Shown here: piece by piece, positions 2,879-31,255 of the stretch | How positions within the stretch are numbered: position 1 is the stretch's first letter | Layout: every line of letters begins with the position of its first letter | Assembly: GCF_006345805.1 (NCBI RefSeq) | Contig: NC_043026.1 | Coordinates: forward strand, 13,123,579-13,187,578 | From: Octopus sinensis | Taxonomy: Eukaryota | Direction: 5' to 3' | Length of the DNA stretch: 64,000 bases | Notes under the pieces: model-generated | Seen by the model: only the letters and a program-made list of their open reading frames with translations | What the model was told of the DNA's origin: nothing | Databases searched by the model: none | Program-made: the position numbers and the translations under genes

Positions 2879-3748
2879 TTACCCAAGTGGACATATGCAT
2901 AGCGTACATCCTTTTGATGAAGCATTTTCCCTCCTCGGTTCAAACTTTAGCTGTTTGAGCAATGTCGACATAATCTGAGGCATTTGTTTCTCCAGTTCGG
3001 GATTGCGATCAGTGTTGAATTCTTCAGAAGCAACACAGTAAGAGACAGCGGTTAAAAGTGTCAGGAGTTCACGTTCAGTGCCATATTCACTCAAAGCTTT
3101 ACTTAATGTTTCCATAAAACACGTACCATTCGTTTTGTTCCTGAAAGACGAATATTTATTATAGGAGGAATGAAAGACCAACAGATCAGGCATAATTGGA
3201 ATATTGGATAGCGTTTCATTCACTTCTGTTTCAGGGCCATCAGTTACACAGAATCCTTCATCAATCTTTCCTCCACGACATGCTTGAACAAAAATTAATT
3301 TGGGTACTCCACTTAAAGATGGACATTTAACGGGTGTCAGGCAAGAAAGCAAATCATACAGTCCAACATCGCGGTCGTATGCACATAACTGATCGTTTTC
3401 CCTACCATGGCTCATAATTGCACAAACAAAGCAACCAACTGGATTACGAGTTCCAACTTTGTTAACATTTTTGAAAGTATTGAGCATTTCATCGGCTTTT
3501 TTATCTTTAAAAACTGTGACATCCCGTTTAGAAAATCCAAGTTTTATTAATGCCGCTTTAAAAGCTTTTGTATCTTTTGATGAGCCTTCACGATATAGAG
3601 AATCTTTGTTGAAATTTTCGTGGTTGAAGATGTAGGCTACAAGTCGCTTGTTATTTATATCATATTTAGCGAAACATTTACTAAGATCTTCCTTAGTTGG
3701 TGAATGGGGCTGATCGCTTGTCCCAACGTTTTCACCTCCATCTGCCAT
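2879..3748 (-). CDS. Effector-type caspase (caspase-3/7-like, short prodomain), copy A, 289 aa, intronless
   Basis: ATG at 3748 in ACAACCATGG context. Motifs NHENF..REGS, CAIMSHG, KLIFVQACRG, linker VTD/G, DLLVFHSSY..SFRN..GTCF, QMPQIMSTLLKQLKF. No CARD or DED. Ends GCTLCICPLG-stop. Confidence 0.92.
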   Translation of the reverse strand: MADGGENVGTSDQPHSPTKEDLSKCFAKYDINNKRLVAYIFNHENFNKDSLYREGSSKDTKAFKAALIKLGFSKRDVTVFKDKKADEMLNTFKNVNKVGTRNPVGCFVCAIMSHGRENDQLCAYDRDVGLYDLLSCLTPVKCPSLSGVPKLIFVQACRGGKIDEGFCVTDGPETEVNETLSNIPIMPDLLVFHSSYNKYSSFRNKTNGTCFMETLSKALSEYGTERELLTLLTAVSYCVASEEFNTDRNPELEKQMPQIMSTLLKQLKFEPRRENASSKGCTLCICPLG

Positions 3749-3789
3749 GGTTGTCAATGTAAGAAGTGATGAGCAGAACTGGTTCCGTT

Positions 3790-6030: not shown

Positions 6031-7309
6031 TAAATGCTTTCTAAGATGGCGTCGTCCACGGTGATGATGCAGACGACAATGACATCATATATATTGTACG
6101 TATTTCTTTAGTGCCACTTAGCTTTGTATTTCAAAACAGTTTCATTTTCCAAGGACAATTTACTTTCCCTGTAAAAATGACGGTCAATTGCATGATAAAC
6201 GCGATCGTACATGTGTATGTGTTGTGTGTGTAAGTGTGTGTGTGTGCGTGTGTGCTTGGTTATGTGTTTGTGTGAAACCTGTTTGGTTTTCTTAAGTGGG
6301 ATCGTGCTGGGATGGGTCTGGCCAGGGATTAAACTGGAGTATTTTGCTGGGATTAATCCAATGACTTAAAAGTAACATGTGGTTATGCCGCAGAAAAAAC
6401 GATTTTCCTTCATTTAGCTGTTATTTCTAGCATGTTGAATTTCTTTGAGGGGTCCATATTTTACATCTTCTGTTCGGGCGAAATCTACGCGGGCGCAAAG
6501 ACACATGTTCAATATGTACAACATTCGGAATTTCTTAGTTTTTGTAAGAAGAAAAATGTAGGAGGAATGACATTGGATCTTTCTTTCTGAAAGTTTAAAA
6601 TTGAAAAAATCTATCTTTCACATTCGAAATCTCCGTTGATTAAGCAAAAAAGTAAAATAAAAAACTGTTACCCCAAATCATAATCCTCGATAACAAAAAA
6701 ATAGGAATGCCTGAGATATTTTTGTAAAATAGAGAGGGTTGAGATAGCGCCGAACAGCGCCGATATTTGAATCAAAAAAGGGTCACACGAAAATATATCT
6801 GAAGGCTGCCCTCATAGGTAAGAGGGTTAAACGGTCAGATGCACGGTGCAAAATATCCGTAAAGAGTCTTTCTTTCAGTATTTGGAATTTAAAAATTCGG
6901 AAATGTTTCGTTGAGGGTCTAAATCTTCGGTAATTTCCGTCACAAAGTTTTATATATTTACTTTCTCGTTTCATGTCGTGTTGAAGGTGACATTTGCTTC
7001 GAAATCAGTGAGGGGGGTGAAAGGTGGAATAGAATGGAGGGCGCGTGCGCAATCGTACACAGATAGACACACGCACATACACACACACACACAAACACCA
7101 CACACAGATCCCTTTGAAATTTAGAATTTAACTATAAGGCACAGGTGTTCTTAATAAAGGCACAGGTGTTCTTATAAAATTCATGCTGAGAAATACTTTT
7201 AGTTAAGTATCACGTTCATGATCATTTTAGCAATTATTTAGCTGAAAATATTACATTTATCTATTTATCAATTTATGCTGTTGGTGTTACCTGTGGAAAT
7301 AGTCATGTT

Positions 7310-7485
7310 ATATATATGTATATATATATATGTATATATATATGTATCGAAATCTGCGATGAGGAATCGGTTTCTGACTGAAGAACGAAGGCTTTGAATG
7401 ACCCGTCTGTCTCTTATGTTCGTCCCTTCGTGTATTTCACGTTATTTATTTATGTAAAGGTTTATTATATATATATCTATATCTA

Positions 7486-7548
<63 letters not shown>

Positions 7549-7566
7549 GTATATATATATTATATA

Positions 7567-7614
<48 letters not shown>

Positions 7615-7640
7615 TATATATATATATACATGTATATACA
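7310..7640. repeat. (TA)n and (TATC)n microsatellites
   Basis: Direct reading. Mirrored at about 26,100-26,460. Confidence 0.9.
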
Positions 7641-7805
7641 TGAGGTTTTTAAAATCTACTCCGTTGCATCTCTGGATGTGTGTGTTTCTAAACCATATTC
7701 TTTTCGTACAATATGCAGATGCGTCAGAAATTCTCACCGTAAGAAGTTCCATATCTATTTAAGGGTCCCACACCAGAAATATTTTACTTCCTCTCTCAAA
7801 ATTTT

Positions 7806-8290
7806 AGGTTTTTGAGCAAGGTTGATATAATCTGAGGCATTCGCTTACAGCCATTATATTTTGAATTGGAATTCAAAAGAGGCAAGATAGTTTTAATCCG
7901 GATCTACCAGCATCGATTTCTTAATCTCACGACCAGCTTGACTAAAGATTAATTTAATTATTCCCTATAATGATGGACAGCAATCGAGTCCCGGGCAAGA
8001 AAGCAACGCATCTAGCTTCACTTCATCGTCGTATCCATATATAACATCGTTTTCTTCCCCATGATACAGAATTGCACAAATAAAGCAATCAATAGTGATA
8101 ACAGGATTATCTTCCTCAAATTCTTTCATCAAAAGACGAGGATTTAAAAAGAGGACCTCAGCTTTATACAGATGTAACAGTCGAACAAATGTTTGACTTC
8201 TGAATCTGTATAAAATCTGAGGTCATCATCTTGAAATCACGATTTTCTCAAGCCCTTTGAACATCTCCGTCTTTTGATGAAAGAATTTGA
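7806..8290 (-). pseudogene. Caspase pseudogene (left-arm copy)
   Basis: Minus strand reads CFICAILYHG...CPSL*GIIKLIFSQAGRE...MPQIISTLLK. In-frame TAG (7965-7967), catalytic Cys replaced by Gly, most of the small subunit deleted. Confidence 0.8.
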
Positions 8291-9849
8291 GCAAGATAAT
8301 CTTGAAATCGTTTTTGATTGCTTTATTTGTGCAATTCCGCGATACACGAAGGACAGACGTAAAAGCTAATACATGGTATTATTTCGTTGTCATTTCAGAG
8401 ATTATCCTCCAGAGATTATCCTCCGGAGTGAAACAAATACCCAAAGAATTGAAGAAACGTTACGCAATGATGCCCAGAAAGTACAATGCAGTGAGAAAAC
8501 AAAGTAAAACAATTTCTGTTTCGCAGACAATGTTTTACTAATCCAGCGATGTATGAGAGCACAGGAATAATATAACCTACATATTGATTTTCGTTAAATA
8601 AATATCCCCTAACATTTTAAGGTGCTGCTTCACTAAAACTATTTCCTCCCGTAAATTTTACTAAAGAACACCAGTGACTTATAGGTCCATTCTAAATTAC
8701 AAAATAATCCTACATTCTGAAAATTGAACCAACATTGTTTTATATACAACTAAATATGAACAATATTAATATCTAGGCTATTTTATTCATGTATTTTCCT
8801 ATATCGCTGGATTCGTAACAGTTTCTCTGCCAAAGAGAAATTTTTTATCTTTCTTCTCTCACTGCATTAAACTATCTCATCACCATTGCGTAATATTTTT
8901 TTCAATTATTCTGCTATTCTTGTTAAATTCTTGTGGATAATCTCCTAATAAAATTTCTCTCTTATAAATGTGAAGTCTCTGAATTGCCAATGAAATATCA
9001 AAATGTATCAGCTTTTTCGTTAGTCTTAATTTATTTAGATATGTAAAGTGTGAATGAAAACTTCTGTAAATTTCTTTGCCTGCAGCGCAATGTTTCCATC
9101 ATGGGTTCAATCTTGTCTTTATCTTGCGTCTAATTGCTCGACAATTTCCGTAAGTAGTTCGTTACGGAAATTGCCGACAACTGAAGGAAAGGCATTTTAT
9201 CTTTTTCGGACACCTCGCATCTGAACGTTTAACCATCTTACTTATGAGTTCAGCCTCCGGATATGTTTTTATGAAATCCTTTCTCTTTCAAATTTCGGCG
9301 GGGTTTACCCTAACCCCAAATCCATATTCCTTTCATTTATTTCTTACTCTTTCCGATGTTTTAGTTATGGAAGATTACGATTTTGCCAAAAAAAGAAAAA
9401 AAAAGAAATTTTCCAAAATAAAAATTTCTTTCCCACCCAAAGTTTTTTTATTTTACAATTTTTTAAAGAGGGGTTTTGTTTAAACTACGTCTACAGACAC
9501 GGAGATAGAATCCGGAAGATTTATTCTTTTAGTTCAAACTTCCAGAAAAAAGACCCTAAGTTGCTTCTCATATATTTCCTTCTTTCCAAAAGTAGAAAAC
9601 TCCTTTTTAGACGGATTGGATGTGTTGCTTTGCGCCTGCGTAGAAGTAAAGTACGAACGTAGAAGAAATGTGGAAGCAAATATGAATCCCTCACTGGAAA
9701 TGTGGATATGGAAGAATAAAAGCTGAAAATATTGTTTCTCGCCCTAAATACACCTTTTTTAAAATTCATTCGATTAATTTCGCAAAGATCTCCAAATCCC
9801 TCCCAGGAAATTCGACTTAAGAAAACTACGAAGATTTCATACAAACACA

Positions 9850-10820
9850 AACACACACGCCACACCACACACTCACTACATACCACAAAGGCATACACAC
9901 TCACGCACGCACACAAACACACACGCCACACGCACACACTCATACATACACACACAGGCATACACACTCACGCACACACCACACACACACACTCATACAT
10001 ACACACACAGGCATACACACTCACGCACACACCACACACACACTTATATATACACACACAAGCATACACACTCACGCACACACCACACGCACACTTATAT
10101 ATACACACACAGGCATACACACTCACGCACACACCACACGCACACTTATATATACACACACAGGCATACACACTCACGCACACACCACACACACACTTAT
10201 ATATACACACACAGGCATACACACTCACGCACACACCACACACACACTTATATATACACACACAGGCATACACACTCACGCACACACCACACGCACACTT
10301 ATATATACACACACAGGCATACACACTCACGCACACACCACACGCACACTTATATATACACACACAGGCATACACACTCACGCACACACCACACACACAC
10401 TTATATATACACACACAGGCATACACCTCACGCACACACCACACACACATTATATATACACACACAGGCACACACACACTCACGCACAACCACACGCACA
10501 CTTATATATAACACACAGCATACACACTCACGCACACCACACGCACACTTTATATATACACACACAGGCATACACACTCACGCACACACCACACACACAC
10601 TTATATATACACAACAGGCATACACACTCACGCACACACCACACACACACTTATATATACACACACAGGCATACACACTCACGCACACACCACACGCACA
10701 CTTATATATACACACACAGGCACACACACTCACGCACACACACAAACACACACCACACGCACACACTCATACATACACACACAGACATACACACACTCAC
10801 ACACACATACACACACACAC
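9850..10820. repeat. 51-bp CA-derived minisatellite
   Basis: Unit CACACACAGGCATACACACTCACGCACACACCACACGCACACTTATATATA, roughly 15 copies. Gives the 17-aa period seen in ORF 9732-10511. Confidence 0.85.
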
Positions 10821-10989
10821 AGACATTCATTCACAACACCCTTATATACGAGAGCAGTTTAACATACACTTGACCGTCATTTTACATTGAAATTGATTTG
10901 TCCTTGGAAACCGAAACTGCGTTGCGATTACAAAGCTGAAGTGGTCCCAAACACATCCTGTAATGTCATAGACCCAATGGATGATGTCA

Positions 10990-11200
10990 GTTCGAAGTGT
11001 TTCCTCAGTGTTATCCGGGGAATCGATTTACAGGAGAACACTCAGACGATAGAGGACATGCAACAAGTTCCGGACAGAATGGTAGAGCAAATTGTGGCTT
11101 TCATAATGGAACGTGTGTGTTCTGGGGCCCATTATATTTACAGAGAAGTGCACCAGTTACTATATAATCTCCAAAGGCATCGCTTTATTCAGGCCACTTG
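10990..11200 (+). mobile_element. Highly diverged fragment homologous to the start of the RTE-like segment at 27,760
   Basis: Visible alignment of CCGGGGAATCGATTTACAGGAGAAC...CAAGTTCCGGAC with CCGGGGAGTTGATTTACACGAGAGC...CAGGTTCCAGAC. Mirror copy at about 22,450-22,660. Confidence 0.55.
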
Positions 11201-11384
11201 AAGTACTTTGATGGGTTAATACAATGAATTAAAATGAAATAATTTAAGAGAGAATTTATTTCGATATAGAATTTCAGTTTTTGCTTTCGTAGGAAATCTG
11301 TTTTTGTTTTATTCGCAATACTCGCGCGTACACTCACACTTAGCCGGAAGACAGACAGACAGACAGACATACACACGAACATAC

Positions 11385-11655
11385 ATGTATGTGTGTAGTA
11401 TGTGTGTGTGTATGTATGTATGTATGTATGTATGTATGTATGTATGTATGTATGTATGTATGTAGGATGTATGTATGTATGTATGTATGTATGTATGTAT
11501 GTATGTATGTATGTATGTCTGTATGTATGTATGTATGTATGTATGTATGTATGTATGTATGTATGTATGTATGTATGTTTGTATGCATGTATATGTATGT
11601 ATGTATGTATGTTTGTATGATATGTATGTATGTATGTAGTATGTCTGTATGTATG
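11385..11655. repeat. (TATG)n microsatellite
   Basis: Direct reading. Shorter mirror at about 22,100-22,270. Confidence 0.95.
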
Positions 11656-11825
11656 GAAGAAAAAACTATTTCCACAGGTAACACCAACAGCATAAATTGA
11701 TAAATAGATAAATGTAATATTTTCAGCTAAATAATTGCTAATATGATTACAAATTGATATTGGTTTAATAAATACTCTAATTTTGCAAGATGCCTAACTA
11801 AACCCATTCCTAGCATGAATTTTAT

Positions 11826-12925
11826 TAAGAACACCTGTGCTTTTTTTTAAAAACACCCCCTGCCTTTATTAGAACACCTGTGTCTTTATTAAGAACACCT
11901 GTGTCTTTATTAAGAACAGATGTGCCTTTATTAAGAACAAACGTGCCTTTATTAAGAACACCTGTGTCCTTCCTTATTAAGAACACCTGTGTCTTTTTAA
12001 GAACACCTGTGTCTTTATTAAGAACAGATGTGCCTTTTTAGAACAAACGTGCCTTTATTAAGAACACTGGTCCTTATTAAGAACACCTGTGTCTTTATTA
12101 AGAACACCTGTGTCCTTATTAAGAACACCTGTGTCTTTATTAAGAACATCTGCATCTTTTAAGAACACCTGTGCCTTTATTAAGAACACACCTGTGTCTT
12201 TATAAAGAACAAATGTACCTTTATTAAGAAACACCTCTGCCATTATTAAGAACACCTGTGTCTTTATTAAGAACACCTGTGTCTTTATTAAGAACAGATG
12301 TGCCTTTATTAGAACAAATGTGCCTATTAAGAACACCCGTGTCCTTATTAAGAACACCTGTGCCTTTATTAAGAACATCTGTGTCTTTATTAAGAACAAA
12401 TGTGCCTTTATTAAGAACACCTGTGTCCTTATTAAGAACACCTGTGTCTTTATTAAGAACACCTGTGTCCTTATTAAGAACACCTGTGTCTTTATTAAGA
12501 ACATCTGCATCTTTATTAAGAACACCTGTGCCTTTATTAAGAACACCTGTGTCTTTATAAAGAACAAATGTACCTTTATTAAGAACACCTCTGCATTTAT
12601 TAAGAACACCTCTGCATTTATTAAGAACACCTGTGTCTTTATTAAGAACACCTGGTGTCTTTATTAAGAACAGATGTGCCTTTATTAGAACAAATGTGCC
12701 TTTATTAAGAACACCCGTGTCCTTATTAAGAACACCTGTGCCTTATTAAGAACACTCTGTGTCTTTATTAAGAACAAATGTGCCTTTATTAAGAACACCT
12801 GTGTCCTTATTAAGAACACCTGTGTCTTTATTAAGAACACCTGTGTCCTTATTAAGAACACCTGTGTCTTTATTAAGAACATCTGCATCTTTATTAAGAA
12901 CACCTCTGCATTTATTAAGAACACC
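11826..12925. repeat. 21-bp minisatellite (TTTATTAAGAACACCTGTGTC)n, about 52 copies
   Basis: Continuous tandem monomers with no spacers. 7-aa period in overlapping pseudo-ORFs. Confidence 0.95.
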
Positions 12926-12980
12926 AGTTATATTCTAAATTTCAAAATAATTCTACACTCTGAAACTTGAACTAACAATT

Positions 12981-13110
12981 AAACAAGTCCAGAAGTTAGG
13001 TTAAATATAGATACAAGCAGAAGTACCATGAATTCCCTTTCTATAAACTGGCAAACAGTTCTGTGAATGCTTCACGGCCAACGCCGGGTATTAAGTCTAG
13101 TATGCAACTA
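12981..13110 (+). mobile_element. Helitron-like 3' end fragment
   Basis: GC hairpin (CCGGC-CAAC-GCCGG in the mirror copy) followed by CTAG|T. Absent from paralogous modules at about 8,730 and 16,070. Confidence 0.55.
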
Positions 13111-13299
13111 AATGCGTACAATATTAATATGGATACTTTCGTAAAACGCTGGATTCGTAAAACATTGTCTGCGAAAGAGAAATTGATTTATTTTTCTTTT
13201 CTCACAGCATTGTATTATTTCAGCAGCATTCCGTAAAGTTCTTTTTTTTCAGTTCTCCTGCTATTTTTTTACTCTCCTGTAAAATCTTCAATGATATTT

Positions 13300-13548
13300 T
13301 AGTTAGTTAGTTAATTTTTTGGCTCAAAAAGAAAAAGCAAGGCATGTAGGGGGACATGGAGTTATGTACAGGGTGGTGCTCATGCAAAGAGTTCAGGCCA
13401 TTTCTGGTCAAGGGAGCCTTTGAACCGAGCGGTCGTCGGCATCTTCACTATCTCGTCCGGCAGCTTATTCCACGGATCCGCAACCCCGGACGGAGAAAAA
13501 GCCCTCTCCTTCGATTCAGATTCAGCATGAAATCATCGCAGATAGAGC
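13300..13548 (-). mobile_element. CR1-clade LINE 3' fragment
   Basis: Minus strand SVRVADPWNKLPDEIVKMPTTARFK..LDQKWPELF plus 3' UTR ending in (TAAC)n. Same family as 49,652-50,150. Confidence 0.8.
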
Positions 13549-13968
13549 TGTTTGTCTGTTATTAACACAAAGTCCCTGAAATGACGACGAAATATAAATG
13601 TATCAGCTTTTATGTTAGTTTTTAAGGTCTTAAAATATTTCAAGCTTGAAGAATGGCTTCTCATGTATTTCCGTTCGACTGCAACGCCATCTTTCGATGA
13701 CGTTTTCAATCTTGTGATTTCCGTATCGTTTTCTTGCAGCTGATTGTTCGGCAATTTCCGTAAGTAATTTCTTTCATTTTCATCATTCATGTCCTGTTCA
13801 ATTCGAGTTTGCTTTGATGTCGGTGAGGGAGGCAAAATGAGATATTGAGGCTAGCAATCACTACACGTATATACTCATACACACACACGATCAAACACAC
13901 GTACACACGTACACACACACACGTGCACTTGTATCACACACTCGTTACGTGTATATGAAATACAATTG

Positions 13969-14126
13969 GTGAGTGGCTGTGTGGTAAGTAGCTTGCTTAC
14001 CAACCACTGGTTCCGGGTTCAGTCCCACTGCGTGGCATCATGGGCAAGTGACTTCTGCTATAACCCCGGGCCGACCAATGCCTTGTGAGTGGATTGGTAG
14101 ACGGAAACTGAAAGAAGCCTGTCGTA

Positions 14127-14172
<46 letters not shown>

Positions 14173-14399
14173 TATATATATGTGTGTGTGTGTGTGTGGT
14201 GTGTGTGTGTGTTTGTGTTGTCCCCTAGCATTGCTTGACAACCGATGCTGGTGTGTTTACGTCCCCGTAACTTAGCGGTTCGGCGAAAGAGACCGATAGA
14301 ATAAGTACTGGACTACAAAGAATAAGTCCCGGGGTCGATTGCTGACTAAAGGCGGTGCTCCAGCATGGCCGCAGTCAAATGACTAAACAAGTAAAGAGT
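13969..14399 (+). mobile_element. tRNA-derived SINE, family A (TGGGCAAGT core, internal (TA)n, GGCGGTGCTCCAGCATGGCC 3' region)
   Basis: A/B-box-like head (TGGCTGTGTGG...GGTTCAGTCCC). At least 8 related copies in the window. Confidence 0.85.
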
Positions 14400-14685: not shown

Positions 14686-14864
14686 GTGACCGGAATGTAA
14701 CGGCCGAAAACAAATAATCTCATTACACAAAGAACTAAAGTTTGAACCGAGGAGCTATGATATTTCAGATGTAATAACCTCAAATGAACATGGATCTTCT
14801 GACGGTGACAATTTCTGATTCATGCGCACATCTTGAGTTGAAAGCCAGGGGTCGGATTTCGTTA

Positions 14865-14915
14865 ACGCATGCGCATTGATAGCAATCTGAGAGGACTGAA
14901 AGAATATATAATACA
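14865..14915 (+). promoter_or_regulatory. Putative promoter of pseudo-caspase C (ACGCATGCGCA + TATATAA)
   Basis: Near-identical to motifs upstream of caspases A and B at similar spacing. Confidence 0.5.
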
Positions 14916-14956
14916 CGGAACTAAGTTCAGCTCATCACATTCTTACATTGACTACC

Positions 14957-15676
14957 ATGGACACTGAAAGCGCAAACATTGGGACAAGCGATCAGCCCAA
15001 TTCACCAACTAAGAAAGATCTTAGTAAATGTTTCGCTAAATATGATATGGAAAATAAAACACGTGTAGCTTATATAGTCGACCCTAAGTGTTCAACAAAC
15101 GATGCAGCAGATTTTAGAAGGGCATTAGAACGTATTGGATTTAAATGTGAACCTATTTATAACGATTTTGAAACAATGTGCAAAGATTTGGAAAAGTTTA
15201 AGGAAACTGAACGTAAAAATAAAATTGGTTGCTTTATTTGTGCAGTTATAAACCAAGATCACGAGAAAGCTGGATCTGACGTAATTGCACTAACTTCTAA
15301 GCTGACAGCCGATAAGTGTCAATCTTTAAAAGGAGTTCCTAAATTAATTTTTATTGAAGCAGTTGAAATAGTTGGAAGATTCCACGCAGTGGATGCACCT
15401 GAAACAGGCAATATACTTAAAATCCCAATAACGGCAGATCTGTTGGTTTTTCGTTCGTGGCGGAAAGAATGTCTGCCAATCCACGGCAAACATGAAGCTT
15501 CGCCATTTATGAAAATATTAACCGAAAATTTGAATGAGTATGGCACTAAATATGAAATCCTGAAACTATTAACCATTACTTCTGGTGAATTCCAAAGTTC
15601 GGAGAATTCGAAAAATAATGGCTCTGAAAGAAAGACTCAGATTGCGTCGACATTGCTCAAAGAACTAATGTTTTGA
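14957..15676 (+). CDS. Catalytically dead caspase homologue (pseudo-caspase C), 239 aa, intact ORF
   Basis: N-terminus GTSDQPNSPTKKDLSKCFAKYD matches A/B. GCFICAVINQD replaces SHG and KLIFIEAVE replaces QACRG. DLLVFRS and QIASTLLKELMF retained. No stops or frameshifts; ACTACCATGG start. Confidence 0.82.
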   Translation: MDTESANIGTSDQPNSPTKKDLSKCFAKYDMENKTRVAYIVDPKCSTNDAADFRRALERIGFKCEPIYNDFETMCKDLEKFKETERKNKIGCFICAVINQDHEKAGSDVIALTSKLTADKCQSLKGVPKLIFIEAVEIVGRFHAVDAPETGNILKIPITADLLVFRSWRKECLPIHGKHEASPFMKILTENLNEYGTKYEILKLLTITSGEFQSSENSKNNGSERKTQIASTLLKELMF

Positions 15677-16449
15677 ACCAGCGAACTAAAATATTTCCGG
15701 TGTGGGATCCTTAAATAGAAATGCGCTTCTTATGGTGAGAATTTCTGATGCATCTACATATTATATGAAAAGAATATATTTTAGATATTCATACATCGAA
15801 AACTACAAGAATTTTAAGAATTCATATATCTACAAATAAATGCACAATTTCACGTGCAATACCCACAGCAGAAATTGATAAATCGATAAATACAATATTT
15901 TCAACTAAATGATTGCTAATATGATTACAAACTTGATTTTAGTTTAATATCTTCGAACATTTTAAGATGCTTCACTAAACCTATTTCCTACCATAAATTT
16001 TACTAAGAACACCACGTGACTTATTGGTACATTCTAAATATCAAAATAATTCTACACTCTGAAATTGGACTAACATTCTTTTATATACAACTAATATGAA
16101 CAATATTAATACGTAGACTATTTTATTCACATGCTTTCATATATCGCTGATTCCTAAAGGTTATCCGCCAAACAGAAATTATTTTCTTTCTTTTCTTATT
16201 GCATTATATCTCAGTACAATTGCGTAACGTTTCTTTCTTCCAATAATTCTGATATTTTTTTTTACTCTGGTGGTTAATCTCTCCTTAAAATTTGTCTTTT
16301 ATTAACATATTGTCTCTGAATTGCCAACAACATAATAAAATCTATCAGCTTGTACGTTGTTTGTAATTAATTTAAAACATATTAAGTGTAAATGAATGTT
16401 TCGTCTGTAATTTTGTTTGCCTGGAACGCAATATTTCCATGATGTTTTC

Positions 16450-18951: not shown

Positions 18952-19184
18952 GTTTGACTGCGGCCATGCTGGAGCACCCGCCTCTAGTCGAGCAAATCGA
19001 CACCACGACTATTTTTGTAAGCCTAGTACTTATTCTATCGGTCTCTTTCGCCGAACCGCTAAGTTACGGGGACGTAACACACCAGCATCGTTTGTCAAGC
19101 AATGCTAGGGGGACAAACACAGACACAAACACAGACACGCATATATTATATATATTATATATTATAATATATATATATATATAT

Positions 19185-19222
<38 letters not shown>

Positions 19223-19453
19223 ATATATTATATATGTATATATGTAGGTCCCGGGTTGAGTCGGGGTTAACCACAGTAAATAAGGTACTCAATACATAGC
19301 AGAGTAAATTAATTTATTATATAGAAGCTTTGGTGATGGTTATAAGGGCACTGGGGTGTGCTAGGATATGTAGGTCCCGGGTTGAGTCGGGGTTAACCAC
19401 AGTAAATAAGGTACTCAATACATAGCAGAGTAAATTACTTTATTATATAATAA

Positions 19454-19486
<33 letters not shown>

Positions 19487-19509
19487 TATATATATATATA
19501 TATAATATA

Positions 19510-19565
<56 letters not shown>

Positions 19566-19695
19566 CATATATACGACAGGCTTCTTTGAGTTTCCGTCTA
19601 CCAAATCCACTCACAAGGCATTGGTCGGCCCGGGGTTATAGCAGAAGACACTTGCCCATGATGAACCCAGAACCATGTGGTTGGTTAGCCACTCA
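18952..19695 (-). mobile_element. SINE family A (mirror of 13,969-14,378) with extra insertion in its (TA)n tract
   Basis: Reverse complement of the left copy, 3' tail truncated. Contains a 126-bp duplicated insert at 19,243-19,450. Confidence 0.8.
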
Positions 19696-20124
19696 CCATT
19701 ATATTTCATATACACGTAACGAGTGGTGATACAAGTGCACGTGTGTGTGTGTGTGTGTTTGTGTGTGTACATGTGTTTGATCGTGTGTGTGTGTGAGTAT
19801 ATACGTGTAGTGATTGCTAGACTTAATATCTCATTTTGCCTCCCTCACTGACATCAAAGCAAACTCGAATTGAACAGGACATGAAATGATGGAAAATGAA
19901 TAGAAATTACTTACGGAAATTGCCGAACAATCAGCTGCAAGAAAACGATACGGAAATCACAAGATTGAAAACGTCATCGAAAGATGGCGTTGCAGTCGAA
20001 CGGAAATACATGAGAAGCCTTTCTTCAAGCTTGAAATATTTAAGACCATAAAACTAACATAAAAGCTGATACATTTTATTATTTCGTCATCATTTCAGGG
20101 ACTTTGTGTTAATAACAGACAAAC

Positions 20125-20372
20125 AGCTCTATCTGCGACAATTTCATCTGAATCGAAGGAGAGGGGGCTTTCTCCGTCCGGGTTGCGGATCCGTGGAATA
20201 AGCTGCCGGACGAGATAGTGAAGATGCCGACGACCGCTCGGTTCAAAGCCTCCCTTGACCAGAAATGGCCTGAACTCTTTGCATAAACACCACCCTGTAC
20301 ATAACTCCATGTCCCCCTACATGGCCTTGCTTTTTTGCTTTTTGAGCCAAAAAATTAACTAACTAACTAAAA
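20125..20372 (+). mobile_element. CR1 LINE 3' fragment (mirror copy)
   Basis: Reverse complement of 13,300-13,548. Confidence 0.8.
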
Positions 20373-20747
20373 TATCATTGAGAGATTTTCCAGGAGAGTA
20401 AAAAATAGCAGGAGAACTGAAAAAAAAAAGAACTTTACGGAATGCTGCTGACATAATACAATGCTGTGAGAAAAGAAAAATAAATCAATTTCTCTTTCGC
20501 AGACAATGTTTTACGAATCCAGCGTTTTACGAAAGTATCCATATTAATATTGTACGCATTTAGTTGCATACTAGACTTAATACCCGGCGTTGGCCGGTGA
20601 AGCATTCACAGAACTGTTTGCCAGTTTATAGAAAGGGAATTCATGGTACTTCTGCATTGTATATATATTTAACCTAACTTCTGGACTTGTTTAATTGTTA
20701 GTTCAAGTTTCAGAGTGAAGAATTATTTTGAAATTTAGAATATAACT

Positions 20748-21940
20748 GGTGTTCTTAATAAAGGCACAGTTGTTCTTAATAAAGGCACAAGTGTTCTTAA
20801 TAAAGGCACAGGTGTTCTTAATAAAGGCACAGGTGTTCTTAATAAAGGCACAGGTGTTCTTAATAAAGACACAGGTGTTCTTAATAAGGACACAGGTGTT
20901 CTTAATAAAGACACAGGTGTTCTTAATAAAGGCACAAGTGTTCTTAATAAAGGCACAGGTGTTCTTAATAAAGGCACAGGTGTTCTTAATAAAGGCACAG
21001 GTGTTCTTAATAAAGACACAGGTGTTCTTAATAAGGACACAGGTGTTCTTAATAAAGACACAGGTGTTCTTAATAAAGGCACAAGTGTTCTTAATAAAGG
21101 CACAGGTGTTCTTAATAAAGGCACAGGTGTTCTTAATAAAGGCACAGGTGTTCTTAATAAAGACACAGGTGTTCTTAATAAGGACACAGGTGTTCTTAAT
21201 AAAGACACAGGTGTTCTTAATAAGTTCTTAATAAAGGCACATTTGTTCTTAATAAAGGCACATTTGTTCTTAATAAAGACACAGATGTTCTTATAAAGGC
21301 ACAGGGTTTCTTAATAAGGACACGGGTGTTCTTAATAAGACAGATGTTCTTAATAAAGACACAGGTGTTCTTAATAAGGACACAGGTGTTCTTAATAAGA
21401 CACAGGTGTTCTTAATAAGGACCATTGTTCTTAATAAAGGCACATTTGTTCTTAATAAAGGCACATTTGTTCTTAATAAAGACACAGGTGTTCTTAATAA
21501 GGCACAGGTGTTCTTAATAAGGACACAGGTGTTCTTAATAAAGGCACATCTGTTCTTAATAAAGACACAGGTGTTCTTAGTAAAGACACAGGTGTTCTTA
21601 ATAAATGCAGAGGTGTTCTTAATAAAGGCACAGGTGTTCTTAATAAAGGCACATTTGTTCTTTATAAAGACACAGGTGTTCTTAATAAAGGCACAGGTGT
21701 TCTTAATAAAGATGCAGATGATCTTAATAAAGACACGGGTGTTCTTAATAAGGACACAGGTGTTCTTAATAAAGACACAGGTGTTCTTAATAAGGACACA
21801 GGTGTTCTTAATAAAGGCACATTTGTTCTTAATAAAGGCACAGGTGTTCTTAATAAAGACACAGGTGTTCTTAATAAAGGCACAGGTGTTCTAATTAAGG
21901 CAGGGGTGTTTTTAATAAAGGCACAGGTATTCTTAATAAA
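20748..21940. repeat. 21-bp minisatellite, about 57 copies, with 147-bp higher-order repeat
   Basis: Variant AAAGGCACAAGTG recurs at 20,781, 20,928 and 21,075. Confidence 0.95.
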
Positions 21941-22829
21941 ATTCATGCTAGGAAATGGGTTTAGTTAGGCATCTTGCAAAATTAGAGGATATTTATTAAA
22001 CCAATATCAATTTGTAATCATTTTAGCAATTATTTAGCTGAAAATATTACATTTATCTATTTATCAATTTATGCTGTTGGTGTTACCTGTGGAAATAGAT
22101 TTTTCTTCCATACATACAGACATACATACATACATACATACATACATACAAACATACATACATACATACAAACATACATACATACATACAAACATACATA
22201 CATACACACATACATACATACATACATACATGCATGCATACACACACACATACATACACACATACATGTATGTTCGTGTGTTTGTCTGTCTGTCTGTCTG
22301 TCTTCCGGCTAAGTGTGAGTGTACGCGCGAGTATTTGCGAAATAAAACAAAAACAGATTTCCTACGAAAGCAAAAACTGAAATTCTATATCGAAATAAAT
22401 TCTCTCTTAAATTATTTTAATTTTAATTCATTGTATTAACCCATCAAAGTACTTCAAGTGGCCTGAATAAAGCGATGCCTTTGGAGATTATATAGTAAAC
22501 TGGTGCACTTCTCTGTAAATATATGGGCCCCAGAACACACACGTTCATTATGAAAGCCACAATTTGCTCTACCATTCTGTCCGGAACTTGTTGCATGTCC
22601 TCTATCGTCTGAGTGTTCTCCTGTAAATCGATCCCCTGGAAAACACTGAGGAAACACTTCGAACTGACATCATCCATTGGGTCTATGACATTACAGGATG
22701 TGTTTGGGACCACTTCAGCTTTGTAATCGCAACGCATTTCGGATTCCAAGGACAAATCAATTTCAATGTAAAATGACGGTCAAGTGTATGTTAAACTGCT
22801 CTCGTATATAAGGGTGTTGTGAATGAATG

Positions 22830-23880
22830 TCTGTGTGTGTGTGTATGTGTGTGTGAGTGTGTGTATGTCTGTGTGTGTGTGCGTGAGTGTGTATGCCTGT
22901 GTGTGTATATATGAGTGTGTGCGTGTAGTGTGTGTGCGTGTGGTGTGTGTGTTTGTGTGTGCGTGAGTGTGTGTGCCTTTGTGTGTATGTATGAGTGTGT
23001 GCGTGTGGTGTTTGTGTTTGTGTGTGTGCGTGAGTGTGTATGCCTGTGTGTGTATATATGAGTGTGTGCGTGTGGTGTGTGTGTGTTTGTGTGTGTGCGT
23101 GAGTGTGTATGCCTGTGTGTGTATATATGAGTGTGTGCGTGTGGTGTGTGTGCGTGTGGTGTGTGTTTGTGTGTGTGCGTGTGGTGTGTATGTATGAGTG
23201 TGTGCGTGTGGTGTGTGTATTTGTGTGTGTGCGTGAGTGTGTATGTATGAGTGTGTGCGTGTGGTGTGTGTATTTGTGTGTGTGCGTGAGTGTGTATGTA
23301 TGAGTGTGTGCGTGTGGTGTGTGTATTTGTGTGTGTGCCTGTGTGTGTATGTATGAGTGTGTGCGTGTGGTGTGTGTATTTGTGTGTGTGCGTGAGTGTG
23401 TATGTATGAGTGTGTGCGTGTGGTGTGTGTATTTGTGTGTGTGCCTGTGTGTGTATGTATGAGTGTGTGCGTGTGGTGTGTGTATTTGTGTGTGTGCGTG
23501 AGTGTGTATGTATGAGTGTGTGCGTGTGGTGTGTGTGTTTGTGTGTGCGTGAGTGTGTATGCCTTTGTGTGTATGTATGAGTGTGTGCGTGTGGTGTGTG
23601 TGTTTGTGTGTGCGTGAGTGTGTATTCCTGTGTGTGTATATATGAGTGTGTGCGTGTGGTGTGTGTGTGTGAGTGTGTATGCCTGTGTGTGTATGTATGA
23701 GTGTGTGCGTGTGTGTGTATATATGAGTGTGTGCGTGAATGTGTATGCCTGTGTGTGTATATATAAGTGTGTGCGTGTTGTATATATGAGTGTGTGCATG
23801 TGGTGTGTGTGTTTGTGTTTGTGCGTGAGTGTGTATGCCTGTGTGTGTATTGTGGAGTGTGTGCGTGTGGCGTGTGTGTT
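22830..23880. repeat. GT-derived minisatellite (mirror position of 9,850-10,820, different unit mix)
   Basis: Units GTGTGTGCGTGAGTGTGTATG... with variable internal motifs. Confidence 0.85.
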
Positions 23881-25439
23881 TGTGTTTGTATGAAATCTTC
23901 GTAGTTTTCTAGTCGAATTCTCCTGGGAGGGATTTGGAGATCTTTGCCGAAATTAATCGAATGAATTTTAAAAAAGGTGTATTTAGGGCGAAGAAACAAT
24001 ATTTCAGCTTTTATTTCTTCCATATCCACATTTCCAGTGAGGGATTCATATTTTGCTTCCACATTTCTTCTACGTTCGTACTTTACTTCTACGCAGGCGC
24101 AAAGCAACACATCCAATCCGTCTAACAAAAGGAGTTTTTCTACTTTTGGAAAGAAGGAAATTATATGAGAAGCAACTTAGGGTCTTTTTTCTGGAAGTTT
24201 GAAACTAAAAGAATAAATCTTCCGGATTCTATCTCCGTGTCTGTAGACGTAGTTTAAACAAAACCCCTCTTTCAAAAATTGTAAAATAAAAAAACTTTTG
24301 GGTGGGAAGGAAGAAATTTTTATTTTGGAAAATTTCTTTTTGTCTTTTTTTTTGGCAAAATCGTAATCTTCCATAACTAAAACATCGGAAAGAGTAAGAA
24401 ATAAATGAAAAGGAATATGGATTTGGGGTTAGGGTAAAACCGCCGAAATTTGAAACAGAAAGGATTTCATAAAAACATATCCGGAGGCTGAACTCATAAG
24501 TAAGATGGTTAAACGTTCAGATGCGAGGTGTCCGAAAAAGATAAAATGCCTTTCCTTCAGTTGTCGGCAATTTCCGTAACGAACTACTTACGGAAATTGT
24601 CGAGCAATTAGACGCAAGGAAAGGACAAGATTGAACCCATAATGGAAACATTGCGCTGCAGGCAAAGAAATTTACAGAAGTTTTCATTCACACTTTACAT
24701 ATCTAAATAAATTAAGAACTAACGAAAAAGCTGATACATTTTGATATTTCATTGGCAATTCAGAGACTTCCACATTTATAAGAGAAATTTTATTAGGAGA
24801 TTATCCACAAGAATTTAACAAGAATAGCAGAATAATTGAAAAAAATATTACGCAATGGTGATGAGATAGTTTAATGCAGTGAGAGAAGAAAGATAAAAAA
24901 TTTCTCTTTGGCAGAGAAACTGTTACGAATCCAGCGATATAGGAAAATACATGAATAAAATAGCCTAGATATTAATATTGTTCATATTTAGTTGTATATA
25001 AAAACAATGTTGGTTCAATTTTCAGAATGTAGGATTATTTTGTAATTAGAATGGACCTATAAGTCACTGGTGTTCTTTAGTAAAATTTACGGGAGGAAAT
25101 AGTTTTAGTGAAGCAGCACCTTAAAATGTTAGGGGATATTTATTTAACGAAAATCAATATGTAGGTTATATTATTCCTGTGCTCTCATACATCGCTGGAT
25201 TAGTAAAACATTGTCTGCGAAACAGAGATTGTTTTACTTTGTTTTCTCACTGCATTGTACTTTCTGGGCATCATTGCGTAACGTTTCTTCAATTCTTTGG
25301 GTATTTGTTTCACTCCGGAGGATAATCTCTGGAGGATAATCTCTGAAATGACAACGAAATAATACCATGTATTAGCTTTTACGTCTGTCCTTCGTGTATC
25401 GCGGAATTGCACAAATAAAGCAATCAAAAACGATTTCAA

Positions 25440-25930
25440 GATTATCTTGCTCAAATTCTTTCATCAAACGGAGATGTTCAAAGGGCTTGAGAAAATCGTG
25501 ATTTCAAGATGATGACCTCAGATTTTATACAGATTCAGAAGTCAAACATTTGTTCGACTGTTACATCTGTATAAAAGCTGAGGTCCTCTTTTTAAATCCT
25601 CGTCTTTGATGAAAGAATTTGAGGAAGATCATCCTGTTATCATTATTGATTGCTTTATTTGTGCAATTCTGTATCATGGGGCAGAAAACGATGTTATATA
25701 TGGATACGACGATGAAGTGAAGCTAGATGCGTTGCTTTCTTGCCCGGGACTCGATTGCTGTCCATCATTATAGGGAATAATTAAATTAATCTTTAGTCAA
25801 GCTGGTCGTGAGATTAAGAAATCGATGCTGGTAGATCCGGATTAAAACTATCTTGCCTCTTTTGAATTCCAATTCAAAATATAATGGCTGTAAGCGAATG
25901 CCTCAGATTATATCAACCTTGCTCAAAAAC
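25440..25930 (+). pseudogene. Caspase pseudogene (right-arm copy)
   Basis: IDCFICAILYHG (CAT GGG 25,675-80), TAG at 25,771, QAGRE at 25,798, MPQIISTLLK at about 25,898. Same lesions as the left copy. Confidence 0.8.
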
Positions 25931-30277: not shown

Positions 30278-31255
30278 ATGGCAGATGGAGGTGAAAACGT
30301 TGGGACAAGCGATCAGCCCCATTCCCCAACTAAGGAAGATCTTAGTAAACGTTTCGCTAAATATGATATAAATAACAAGCGACTTGTAGCCTACATCTTC
30401 AACCACGAAAATTTCAAAAATAACCATCCTGAATCTCGTGAAGGCTCATCAAAAGATACAGAAGCTTTTATAGCGGCATTAATAAAACTTGGATTTTCTG
30501 AACGGGATGTCACAGTTTTTAAAGATAAAACAGCCGATGAAATGCTCAATGCTTTCAAAAATGTTAACGAAGTTGGAACTCGTAATCCAGTTGGTTGCTT
30601 TGTTTGTGCAATTATGAGCCATGGTAGGGAAAACGATCAGTTATGTGCATACGACCGCGATGTTGGACTGTATGATTTGCTTTCTTGCCTGACACCCGTT
30701 AAATGTCCATCTTTAAGTGGAGTACCCAAATTAATTTTTGTTCAAGCATGTCGTGGAGGAGAGATTGATGAAGGATTCTGTGTAACTGATGGCCCTGAAA
30801 CAGAAGTGAATGAAACGCTATCCAATATTCCAATTATGCCTGATCTGTTGGTTTTTCATTCCTCCTATAATAAATATTCGTCTTTCAGGAATAAACCGAA
30901 TGGTACGTGTTTTATGAAAACATTAAGTGAAGCTTTGATTGAATATGGCACTGAACGTGAACTCCTGACACTTTTAACCGCTGTCTCTTACTATGTTGCT
31001 TCTTCAGAATTCAAAACTTATCGCAATCCCGAACTGGAGAAGAAACAAATGCCTCAGATTATGTCGACATTGCTCAAACAGCTAAAGTTTGAACCGAGGA
31101 GGGAAAATGCTTCATCAAAAGCACGTACGCGAAGCAGAAGTCCACTTGAGGAAACGGATGGGAGTTCAAAGAAGCGCCCGCGCAAGCCGACATTAATACG
31201 CACAACTCCAGGAACATACAAATACACATACATAACACAGTCACATGCACAGTAA
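30278..31255 (+). CDS. Effector-type caspase, copy B, 325 aa, intronless
   Basis: SHG (30,617-30,625), QACRG (30,743-30,757), VTD/G linker. Basic tail RTRSRSP...SKKRPRKP. Confidence 0.92.
   Translation: MADGGENVGTSDQPHSPTKEDLSKRFAKYDINNKRLVAYIFNHENFKNNHPESREGSSKDTEAFIAALIKLGFSERDVTVFKDKTADEMLNAFKNVNEVGTRNPVGCFVCAIMSHGRENDQLCAYDRDVGLYDLLSCLTPVKCPSLSGVPKLIFVQACRGGEIDEGFCVTDGPETEVNETLSNIPIMPDLLVFHSSYNKYSSFRNKPNGTCFMKTLSEALIEYGTERELLTLLTAVSYYVASSEFKTYRNPELEKKQMPQIMSTLLKQLKFEPRRENASSKARTRSRSPLEETDGSSKKRPRKPTLIRTTPGTYKYTYITQSHAQ

What the first reader, a model, noticed from the sequence alone, without database searches (positions are those of the whole stretch)
14957..15676. Intact pseudo-caspase lacking His, Cys and the S1 arginines but keeping the promoter, linker Asp and dimer strand
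Seen: a 239-codon open frame with SHG changed to NQD and QACRG to EAVEI. The NHENF..REGS loop is deleted and SFRN replaced. The start context, promoter motifs, AVD/A linker and C-terminal QIASTLLKELMF are retained. It is far more diverged from A/B than the arms are from each other, yet has no stop, unlike the neighbouring true pseudogenes. Known: the C-terminal strand forms the caspase dimer interface, and c-FLIP-type pseudo-enzymes modulate partners by heterodimerising. Inference: a prodomain-less dominant-negative regulator or a pathogen-inhibitor decoy.
Basis: partly seen in the sequence, partly recalled or inferred. Interest (0 to 1): 0.75.

Follow-up and report, generated by a model that had tools for sequence, protein, structure and literature searches.

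The report
Fast-evolving dead caspase kept in octopus
This is an intact octopus gene for a caspase-like protein that has lost every catalytic residue, has stayed open and promoter-bearing since before two octopus species split, and changes its amino acids faster than neutral DNA, so it is probably a working non-enzymatic relative of the neighbouring caspases rather than a dead gene.

Summary
Window 14957-15676 (+), in Octopus sinensis chromosome CM016888.1, is a 239-codon single-exon caspase-domain ORF (Pfam PF00656, E=1.3e-15). SHG is changed to NQD and QACRG to EAVEI. The first S1-arginine loop is deleted and the second arginine is His. The linker Asp146 and the C-terminal strand are kept.

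New evidence:
- O. bimaculoides has two positional orthologues (XP_014782016.1, XP_014782015.1) with the same deletions and no Cys, so inactivation predates the species split.
- All three ORFs stay open, where 4-7 nonsense changes and 2-9 frameshifts were expected between C and XP_014782016.1.
- A 20-nt promoter block and TATA box are identical to those of every active caspase in the cluster, in three species.
- Residues conserved in active octopus caspases change less often (p=0.002).
- Overall dN/dS is about 2 (p=0.0014), and dN exceeds the divergence of flanking DNA.

Best reading: a maintained, co-regulated, rapidly diversifying pseudo-caspase of the Aedes CASPS18 or FLIP(L) kind.

Heterodimerisation, expression and the state of the O. 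vulgaris copy could not be tested. Structure models were uninformative. I file it as a new member of a known kind, of moderate interest.

The parts
14854..14873 (+). Invariant 20-nt promoter block GGATTTCGTTAACGCATGCG. It contains an NRF1-like CGCATGCGCA palindrome (TF assignment is from my own knowledge, not tested).
   Evidence: Exact copies lie upstream of A, B and C only in the window, 0 expected by chance. Exact copies also lie upstream of every cluster caspase in O. bimaculoides and O. vulgaris loci. The columns are invariant in the 7-gene alignment.
14903..14912 (+). TATA box AATATATAAT, about 50 nt upstream of the ATG. The predicted transcription start is around 14930-14945 (inferred).
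   Evidence: Conserved in all 7 upstream regions aligned. Sequence read.
14957..15676 (+). Gene C: single-exon 239-codon pseudo-caspase ORF including the TGA stop. The database gene model starts at Met31 and gives 209 aa.
15251..15259 (+). Codons N99-Q100-D101 in place of the catalytic Ser-His-Gly.
   Evidence: Alignments.
15356..15370 (+). Codons E134-A135-V136-E137-I138 in place of QACRG (Cys to Val), followed by a 3-codon deletion.
15392..15394 (+). Asp146 of the inter-subunit linker (HAVD/A). An Asp at this column is invariant in all 20 octopus family members aligned.
   Evidence: D146 is an invariant column.
15638..15673 (+). C-terminal strand QIASTLLKELMF. It is equivalent to caspase strand beta-6, which is both a core strand and the dimer interface.
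   Evidence: I229, S231, L233, K235, L237 and F239 are invariant in 20 sequences.
15671..15676 (+). A TTTT run with one extra T relative to O. bimaculoides. This is the only frameshifting indel in the gene. It creates the TGA directly after the domain.
   Evidence: DNA alignment.
15835..15840 (+). Candidate AATAAA polyadenylation signal, about 160 nt after the stop (inferred).
   Evidence: Sequence read.
2879..3757 (-). Paralogue A: a short caspase with SHG, QACRG and both S1 Arg intact. It is the likely partner.
30278..31255 (+). Paralogue B: an intact short caspase, 90% identical to A. It is the likely partner.
7766..8132 (-). True caspase pseudogene fragment in the left arm, used as an internal control. 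It has an in-frame stop, an internal deletion and a frame change, and is 17% diverged from its O. bimaculoides counterpart.
25609..25809 (+). Mirror copy of the same pseudogene fragment, in the right arm.

Best explanation
C is a selectively maintained, catalytically dead paralogue of the neighbouring short, prodomain-less effector-type caspases. In short, it is a pseudo-caspase.

Shown:
- It arose by local duplication of the A/B-type gene.
- It lost the His-Cys dyad and both S1 arginines before O. sinensis and O. bimaculoides diverged.
- Since then it has kept an open frame, the cluster's invariant core promoter and the fold's core residues.
- Meanwhile its surface and former active-site loops changed faster than neutral DNA.

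Inferred:
- It is co-transcribed with A and B from the same promoter type.
- It acts through protein-protein contact with them, most likely as a non-catalytic dimer partner.
- Its linker can still be cut at Asp146, as in FLIP(L) with caspase-8 or Aedes CASPS18 with CASPS19.
- Its rapid sequence turnover reflects co-evolution with fast-evolving partners or antagonists.

My confidence of 0.6 is for 'maintained non-catalytic caspase-fold protein'. The specific heterodimer mechanism I put at about 0.35.
For: Orthology and age:
- C, XP_014782016.1 (P0002) and XP_014782015.1 (P0003) form a clade in 200 of 200 bootstraps. The clade is sister to the A/B/P0007 group in 174 of 200.
- They occupy the same position between an inverted and a direct active caspase.
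- They share the loop deletion, LPI(H/S) in place of SFRN, and loss of Cys.

ORF retention:
- At the observed divergence, 4.4-7.1 stop-creating substitutions were expected between C and P0002. P(none) is 0.001-0.012.
- From the flank indel rate, 2-9 frameshifts were expected.
- Observed CDS indels are 6, 3 and 15 nt, plus one +1 insertion at the last codon. In the flanks, 13 of 15 indels are out of frame (Fisher p=0.037).

Promoter:
- The 20-nt block and TATA box are identical to those of all active cluster members in three species.
- The -120..0 region is at least 90% identical even between gene types whose coding sequences are about 60% identical.

Residual structural constraint:
- Codons at family-conserved positions change amino acid in 23 of 83 cases, against 75 of 154 elsewhere (p=0.002 for C-P0002; p=0.0006 for C-P0003).

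Accelerated protein evolution:
- 98 nonsynonymous against 10 synonymous codon differences.
- Nei-Gojobori (NG86) dN 0.259 +/- 0.025 against dS 0.14.
- Neutral benchmarks are 0.13-0.20.
- omega for the branches within the C/P0002/P0003 clade (crown omega) is 2.2, with LRT against 1 of 10.2 (p=0.0014). Background omega is 0.72.
- There is no GC-to-AT decay bias.

Dead caspase fragments in the same locus show what real decay looks like.
Against: - There is no transcript or peptide evidence. Only the genome-derived model is on record.
- No O. vulgaris orthologue is annotated among 5.8 billion proteins, although its neighbours are. I could not read that DNA.
- C keeps only 51 of 91 family-conserved residues, against 59-60 in the O. 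bimaculoides copies. It also has a private 5-residue deletion in the LLTAVSNY helix.
- P0003 has an in-frame stop in its N-terminal peptide.
- dN/dS at or above 1 gives no direct sign of amino-acid constraint on average.
- The whole cluster, including active members, evolves at omega of about 0.7-1.
- The omega tests use my own code, three sequences and no correction for multi-nucleotide changes.
- The 5' end may be kept by gene conversion from A/B.
- Structure models are uninformative.
Confidence: 0.6

Rival explanations
1. C is an unprocessed pseudogene in slow decay that happens still to be open. It makes no functional protein, and its promoter is merely refreshed by gene conversion from A/B.
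For: - dN/dS is not below 1.
- CDS identity to the orthologue (80.3%) is no higher than that of the flanks.
- There is a conversion-like 5' tract.
- C has a private 15-nt deletion in a conserved helix and the longest branch of the clade.
- No orthologue is annotated in O. vulgaris.
- There is no expression evidence.
- Dead caspase fragments are common in this locus.
Against: - Three genes in two species all keep the frame. P is 0.001-0.012 for stops alone, and lower once frameshifts are included.
- All internal indels are multiples of three.
- omega is significantly above 1, not equal to 1.
- Substitutions avoid family-conserved core positions (p=0.002).
- The inactivation is older than the species split.
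Confidence: 0.15
2. C is a bait or decoy in a host-pathogen conflict. As a caspase look-alike, it soaks up pathogen-encoded caspase-binding inhibitors, or guards the real caspases, and it diversifies under an arms race.
For: - dN exceeds dS and neutral DNA.
- Changes concentrate outside the core, including the former active-site loops.
- The family is expanded, clustered and lineage-specific, as immune gene families often are.
- Mollusc caspase expansions are linked to immunity in PMC7836458.
Against: - From my own knowledge, mechanism-based inhibitors of the p35 or serpin type need the catalytic Cys and an S1 pocket. C lacks both, so it could only trap exosite binders.
- No pathogen partner is known.
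- Active neighbours also evolve fast, so co-evolution with them explains the signal equally well.
Confidence: 0.15
3. C has taken on a function unrelated to caspase regulation, using the caspase fold as a scaffold for a new binding function. Positive selection would then reflect that shift.
For: - Clade-specific residues are conserved between species where the S1/L3 pocket used to be: FRSW...LPI.G.H..SPFMK.
- omega is above 1.
Against: The promoter is identical to that of the active paralogues, and the linker Asp is retained. Both argue for action in the same cells and pathway.
Confidence: 0.1

Closest known systems
Aedes aegypti CASPS18, a caspase-like decoy for the paralogous CASPS19 (Bryant et al. 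2010, as cited in PMC4840389)
   Same: It is a short effector-type caspase paralogue without catalytic residues. It shares its expression profile with an active paralogue and acts on that paralogue. It has no recruitment domain.
   Different: It arose independently in insects, in the Decay group. For CASPS18, enhancement of the partner was shown experimentally. Nothing has been tested for C. C shows dN/dS above 1.
c-FLIP(L) / CFLAR, the vertebrate pseudo-caspase (PMC7586951)
   Same: It has a caspase-like domain without the catalytic Cys, lies next to its active paralogues and retains a linker Asp that the partner cleaves. It works by heterodimerising through the (pseudo)catalytic domain.
   Different: FLIP(L) has tandem DEDs and acts on an initiator caspase at a recruitment platform. 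C has no prodomain and derives from effector-type caspases, which are constitutive dimers. The inactivating residues of FLIP are conserved across vertebrates. Those of the octopus clade differ between species (Val against Ser at the Cys position; Gln, Tyr or His at the His position).
C. elegans CSP-3 and CSP-2, caspase homologues that block CED-3 auto-activation (my own knowledge, not checked here)
   Same: They are non-catalytic caspase paralogues that bind an active caspase and restrain it.
   Different: CSP-3 is a small-subunit-only protein. C has both subunit regions and a linker.
Bivalve Cg3/7-like and Mg2-like caspases with non-canonical or missing His/Cys (PMC7836458)
   Same: They are members of expanded, clustered mollusc executioner-caspase families that lack the conserved His and/or Cys. 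They have been described but not studied functionally.
   Different: They are different lineages, and many lack the p10 part. No orthologue comparison or selection analysis is reported for them.
O. bimaculoides XP_014782016.1 and XP_014782015.1, annotated caspase-1-like and caspase-7-like
   Same: They are positional orthologues, 57% and 56% identical to C. They share the same loop deletions, the lost S1 arginines and the lost Cys, and they carry the same promoter block.
   Different: They have Ser rather than Val at the Cys position. XP_014782015.1 keeps the His. They form a tandem pair with a near-identical C-terminal half. They keep the AVSNY helix segment that C has deleted.

Membership tests
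Caspase fold (Pfam PF00656, MEROPS C14A) | Significant match to the caspase domain profile over both the p20 and p10 regions | tested here: met
   E=1.3e-15, 58.2 bits against a cut-off of 21.4, profile positions 22-231 of 233. Caspase-7 is the best solved relative, E=6e-10. Even the low-confidence model hits only caspases.
Catalytically active caspase | His-Cys dyad (SHG ... QACxG) | tested here: not met
   His is replaced by Gln100 and Cys by Val136.
Catalytically active caspase | Two S1-pocket arginines that bind the P1 Asp | tested here: not met
   The first Arg lies in an 11-residue deletion. The second is His176.
Pseudo-caspase, general (pseudoenzyme retained by selection) | The inactive state is old and the gene is kept intact in more than one species | tested here: met
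   The losses are shared with two O. bimaculoides orthologues, and the ORFs are open against expectation. The O. vulgaris copy could not be read.
Pseudo-caspase, general (pseudoenzyme retained by selection) | The gene is expressed as a protein | not testable with these tools
   Only promoter conservation could be assessed. No transcript-derived copy is on record.
c-FLIP(L) type | Tandem death-effector domains for recruitment | tested here: not met
   Only a peptide of about 30 residues precedes the caspase domain, and Pfam finds no other domain.
c-FLIP(L) type | Heterodimer with the active paralogue through the pseudo-catalytic domain | not testable with these tools
   No multimer prediction is available. 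Monomer models are poor, with pLDDT 58 for C and 59.5 for the control A. The C-terminal strand is conserved, but that is required for the fold anyway.
c-FLIP(L) type | Linker Asp cleaved by the partner | tested here: inconclusive
   Asp146 is present and the column is invariant in 20 family members. Cleavage itself was not tested.
CASPS18-type decoy caspase | A short-prodomain paralogue without catalytic residues, located beside and co-regulated with an active paralogue | tested here: met
   C lies in the same cluster between A and B and has an identical core promoter. Co-expression is inferred, not measured.
CASPS18-type decoy caspase | Changes the activity of the partner caspase | not testable with these tools
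   This needs co-expression and activity assays.
Unprocessed pseudogene | Disabling stops or frameshifts, promoter decay and neutral substitution pattern | tested here: not met
   There is no internal stop or frameshift. The promoter is intact. omega is 2.2 and differs from 1 (p=0.0014). Substitutions avoid core positions. The real pseudogene fragments nearby meet all of these criteria.

The most novel reading that the evidence does not exclude
A prodomain-less effector-type pseudo-caspase has been under sustained positive selection since before the O. sinensis / O. bimaculoides split. It acts as an adaptive, rapidly retuned subunit or bait within a cephalopod-specific, co-regulated caspase cluster. 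One version is that it forms heterodimers that change the activity or specificity of A/B. Another is that it intercepts pathogen factors that target them. Either would be a pseudoenzyme caught in an arms race, not a static brake.
Probability: 0.25. Interest if true: 0.7.

Novelty: new member of a known kind. Interest (0 to 1): 0.45.

Why it matters
Pseudo-caspases are few and mostly known from vertebrates (FLIP), nematodes and one mosquito case. All of them turned out to be regulators of their active paralogues.

This octopus lineage adds an independent origin from effector-type caspases. It comes with an unusually clean natural experiment:
- active partners, the dead paralogue and truly decayed copies lie side by side;
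- they share one invariant promoter;
- the coding-sequence signal is the opposite of the usual purifying selection.

If the protein is made and binds A/B, it would give cephalopod cell-death and immunity research a tractable regulator. It would also be an example of adaptive evolution in a pseudoenzyme. If it is not expressed, it is a caution that open frames and intact promoters can persist in conversion-prone gene clusters.

Tried and rejected
- **O. vulgaris orthologue.** The loci around P0004/P0006 (L003, L004) stop about 10 kb upstream of the B-like gene, roughly 5 kb short of where C should lie. I tried to reach further through the 239-aa gene model called on the minisatellite. That used the last protein search and returned nothing. 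P0164 lies 3.3 Mb away on the same record and was of no help.
- **Unplaced O. sinensis scaffold VCDQ01006033.1 (L007).** It carries a third B-like arm that is 95-96% identical. Its fetched part ends at the equivalent of window 19419, short of any C-like copy.
- **Exact look-up of the 239-aa protein.** It is not on record. Only the 209-aa model is.
- **AlphaFold2 with the 20-sequence octopus alignment.** pLDDT is 58 for C. The active control A gives 59.5 with the same alignment. The poor model therefore reflects alignment depth, not C itself, and nothing structural can be concluded.
- **L003/L004 in the script sandbox.** They never appeared there, so O. vulgaris genes are absent from the codon analyses.
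- **Monte-Carlo ORF-survival simulation.** It timed out and was replaced by an analytic expectation.
- **Compositional artefact as the cause of omega above 1.** The idea was that codon positions 1 and 2 decay towards AT after loss of constraint. It is rejected: AT-to-GC changes (37) equal GC-to-AT changes (38) at positions 1 and 2.
- **A substitute catalytic dyad.** His102 (NQDH) and Cys172/His176 (ECLPIH) are not conserved in the orthologues, so this is rejected.
- **Literature.** I found no paper on octopus pseudo-caspases. PMC2902568, the CASPS18 paper, is not held.

Full report
**Where we are.** The window is eukaryotic. It comes from Octopus sinensis chromosome record CM016888.1 of assembly GCA_006345805.1, around 13.14 Mb. 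It is AT-rich and full of CA microsatellites and minisatellites, which produce many spurious ORFs. Three real caspase ORFs stand out:
- A at 2879-3757 (minus strand);
- B at 30278-31255 (plus strand);
- C, the finding, at 14957-15676 (plus strand).

All three match Pfam PF00656, with E=6e-44 for A, 1.5e-44 for B and 1.3e-15 for C. A and B sit in inverted arms of about 14 kb each (129-14379 and 18953-33300), which are 86-93% identical. C lies in the 4.5-kb spacer between them.

**The observation.**
- C is a 239-codon single-exon frame.
- Against A and B, and against human caspase-7, SHG is replaced by NQD and QACRG by EAVEI, followed by a 3-residue deletion.
- The NHENF..REGS loop that carries the first S1 arginine is deleted, and the second S1 arginine is His176.
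- The linker HAVD146/A and the terminal QIASTLLKELMF are kept.
- C is 43-45% identical to A and B, which are 90% identical to each other.
- The caspase fragments at 7766-8132 (minus strand) and 25609-25809 (plus strand) are truly dead. They have an in-frame stop, YHG and QAGR remnants, loss of the middle third and a frame change.

**Promoter.** An alignment of the 300 nt upstream of seven cluster genes from two species shows an invariant block, GGATTTCGTTAACGCATGCG, about 85-105 nt before the ATG. It also shows a TATA box (AATATATAAT) at about -50 and a conserved ACCATGG start context.
- The 20-mer occurs exactly three times in the 64-kb window, once before each of A, B and C, with none expected by chance.
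- It occurs once before each cluster caspase in the O. bimaculoides and O. vulgaris loci, but not at an unlinked caspase locus.
- The -120..0 region is at least 90% identical even between gene types whose coding regions are about 60% identical. The core promoter is therefore under strong constraint, and C has a complete copy.

There is a caveat. From -120 to +100, C is 87-94% identical to the same-species A. Downstream it is about 60% identical to A and about 80% identical to its orthologue. This points to a gene-conversion tract covering the promoter and the first 33 or so codons.

**Orthologues.** A search of 5.8 billion proteins found only two close relatives of C, both from O. bimaculoides: XP_014782016.1 (P0002, 57% identity) and XP_014782015.1 (P0003, 56%). 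An exhaustive profile search of 1.8 billion representatives added no further member of this type.
- Both genes are single-exon and lie in tandem between an inverted active caspase (P0007) and a direct active caspase. This matches the A(-) / C(+) / B(+) layout.
- Flanking non-coding blocks and even the dead fragment are collinear between the two species.
- C, P0002 and P0003 form a clade in 200 of 200 bootstraps. The clade is sister to the A/B/P0007 group in 174 of 200.
- All three share the loop deletions, LPI(H/S) in place of SFRN and loss of the catalytic Cys. The replacing residues differ: Val in C and Ser in P0002/P0003 at the Cys position; Gln, Tyr or His at the His position.

The catalytic apparatus was therefore lost, at least in large part, before the two species diverged.

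**Is it decaying?** Between C and P0002 the orthologous block is 84.2% identical upstream, 80.3% in the CDS and 87.9% downstream. Other neutral benchmarks, namely the dead caspase fragment and two 1.8-kb intergenic blocks, give JC distances of 0.19-0.20.
- At that divergence, 4.4-7.1 stop-creating substitutions were expected in the CDS. P(none) is 0.001-0.012.
- The indel rate of the flanks predicts 2-9 frameshifts.
- Observed internal indels are 6, 3 and 15 nt. The single out-of-frame event is an extra T directly after the last Phe codon. It creates the TGA and removes only the post-domain tail.
- In the flanks, 13 of 15 indels are out of frame (Fisher p=0.037).
- P0003 has a stop in the N-terminal peptide, with the domain read from a downstream Met.

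Frame retention in three genes of two species is therefore not chance.

**Selection.** There is no average purifying selection.
- Of 108 codons that differ between C and P0002, 98 change the amino acid.
- Differences by codon position are 57, 52 and 33 (chi-square p=0.034).
- The Nei-Gojobori (NG86) method gives dN=0.259 +/- 0.025 and dS=0.14, a ratio of 1.84.
- My own pairwise GY94 maximum-likelihood code gives omega of about 2 (p=0.014).
- A branch model on seven genes gives omega of 2.2 for the branches within the C/P0002/P0003 clade (crown omega). The LRT against omega=1 is 10.2 (p=0.0014). It is robust to the codon-frequency model. Background omega is 0.72.
- dN also exceeds the neutral benchmarks.
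- The excess is not compositional decay, because AT-to-GC and GC-to-AT changes at positions 1 and 2 are balanced at 37 against 38.

Substitutions are not spread evenly. Positions conserved in at least 88% of 17 other octopus caspases change in 23 of 83 codons, against 75 of 154 elsewhere (p=0.002 for C-P0002; p=0.0006 for C-P0003). Whole strands, such as KIPITADLLVFRSW, GVPKLIFIE and the C-terminal strand, are untouched. The picture is a conserved fold core with accelerated turnover of surfaces and of the former active-site loops.

Caveats apply. Only three sequences are available, the code is my own, there is no site model, and multi-nucleotide changes are not modelled. The active genes of the cluster also evolve fast, with omega of about 0.7-1.

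**Structure.** AlphaFold2 with the 20-sequence octopus alignment gave pLDDT 58 for C. It gave 59.5 for the active control A with the same alignment. The low confidence therefore says nothing about C. The model still retrieves only caspases, with TM-score of about 0.5.

**Interpretation.** The data support a maintained pseudo-caspase and reject a plain pseudogene. The mechanism is inferred.
- An identical promoter implies co-expression with A and B.
- The invariant linker Asp implies that C can still be processed by active caspases.
- The fold core, including strand beta-6, is kept.

The closest precedents are Aedes CASPS18, a short decoy caspase co-expressed with and acting on CASPS19 (PMC4840389, citing Bryant et al. 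2010), and FLIP(L), which heterodimerises with caspase-8 and is cleaved at its linker Asp (PMC7586951). C lacks DEDs, so it is not a FLIP family member.

The omega above 1 suggests co-evolution with fast-evolving partners or with antagonists. A decoy for mechanism-based inhibitors is unlikely without the Cys and the S1 pocket (my own knowledge).

**What weakens the case.**
- There is no expression evidence.
- There is no annotated O. vulgaris orthologue, and its DNA could not be reached.
- C is the most eroded member of the clade. It keeps 51 of 91 conserved residues and has a private 5-residue deletion in the LLTAVSNY helix.

**Novelty.** Catalytic-site-less caspase paralogues have been described in expanded mollusc families (PMC7836458). 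C and its orthologues are already annotated as caspase-like proteins. What is new here is the orthology, the frame-retention statistics, the shared invariant promoter and the positive-selection signal. I rate it a new member of a known kind, with interest 0.45.

Noticed in passing
window 129-14379 and 18953-33300: There is a large palindrome. Two inverted arms of about 14 kb are 86-93% identical and symmetric about position 16.8 kb. Each arm carries an active caspase (A or B), a dead caspase fragment, a minisatellite array and CA repeats. Gene C sits in the 4.5-kb spacer.
   Followed up: partly
L007 (O. sinensis unplaced scaffold VCDQ01006033.1, 33.8 kb): There is a third copy of the arm with a B-like gene (P0166). 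It is 95-96% identical to both window arms. It is either a haplotig or a further duplication. Its unfetched half could hold a second C allele.
   Followed up: partly
window 14837-15056 compared with 3650-3870: From -120 to +100 around the start codon, C is 87-94% identical to A. Downstream it is about 60% identical. Within each species the N-terminal peptides of the paralogues resemble each other more than they resemble their orthologues. This indicates concerted evolution of the 5' ends.
   Followed up: yes
P0008/P0165 and P0158/P0162 (O. bimaculoides and O. sinensis, other chromosomes): Two orthologous pairs of octopus caspases carry Ser in place of the catalytic Cys (EASRG, QASRG). They keep SHG, and three of the four keep the second S1 Arg. 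This Cys-to-Ser variant is conserved between species.
   Followed up: no
P0168, P0016 (O. bimaculoides) and P0010/P0157 (Logan contigs of 1.6 kb): There are further, independent caspase paralogues without His and/or Cys. Tandem two-domain mollusc caspases also occur in which one domain is dead (P0011, P0012, P0014). Loss of the catalytic site is recurrent in this family.
   Followed up: no
P0160, P0161: These caspases have an intact QACRG, but the second S1 Arg is replaced (SVIH, SIKH). This may indicate altered P1 specificity.
   Followed up: no
window 11821-12928 and 20745-21940; L003 1595-2546: 21-bp minisatellite arrays are open in several frames (LIKTQVF..., VLNKDTG...). In O. vulgaris such an array is annotated as a 239-aa gene, which is very likely a spurious model.
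   Followed up: partly
window 15699-15760: Directly after C's stop lies a remnant of another unit's upstream region (GGTGTGGGATCCTTAAATAGA...GGTGAGAATTTCTGATGCAT). It has no gene behind it. It is probably the trace of a lost tandem copy, corresponding to the second O. bimaculoides gene.
   Followed up: no
window 43023-44159 (+), 57621-58361 (-), 62289-63086 (+): There are three long single-exon C2H2 zinc-finger ORFs. This gene type is famously expanded in octopus genomes (the expansion is from my own knowledge).
   Followed up: no
window 46445-47763: There is a tandem array with a period of about 130 bp, 96-98% identical between copies, in a region of strongly negative GC skew.
   Followed up: no
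window 35328-35427: There is an assembly gap of 100 N about 4 kb downstream of B. In O. vulgaris a further caspase (P0006) lies about 3.2 kb downstream of the end of the B-like caspase ORF. No counterpart is present in the window, so it may be hidden by the gap.
   Followed up: no
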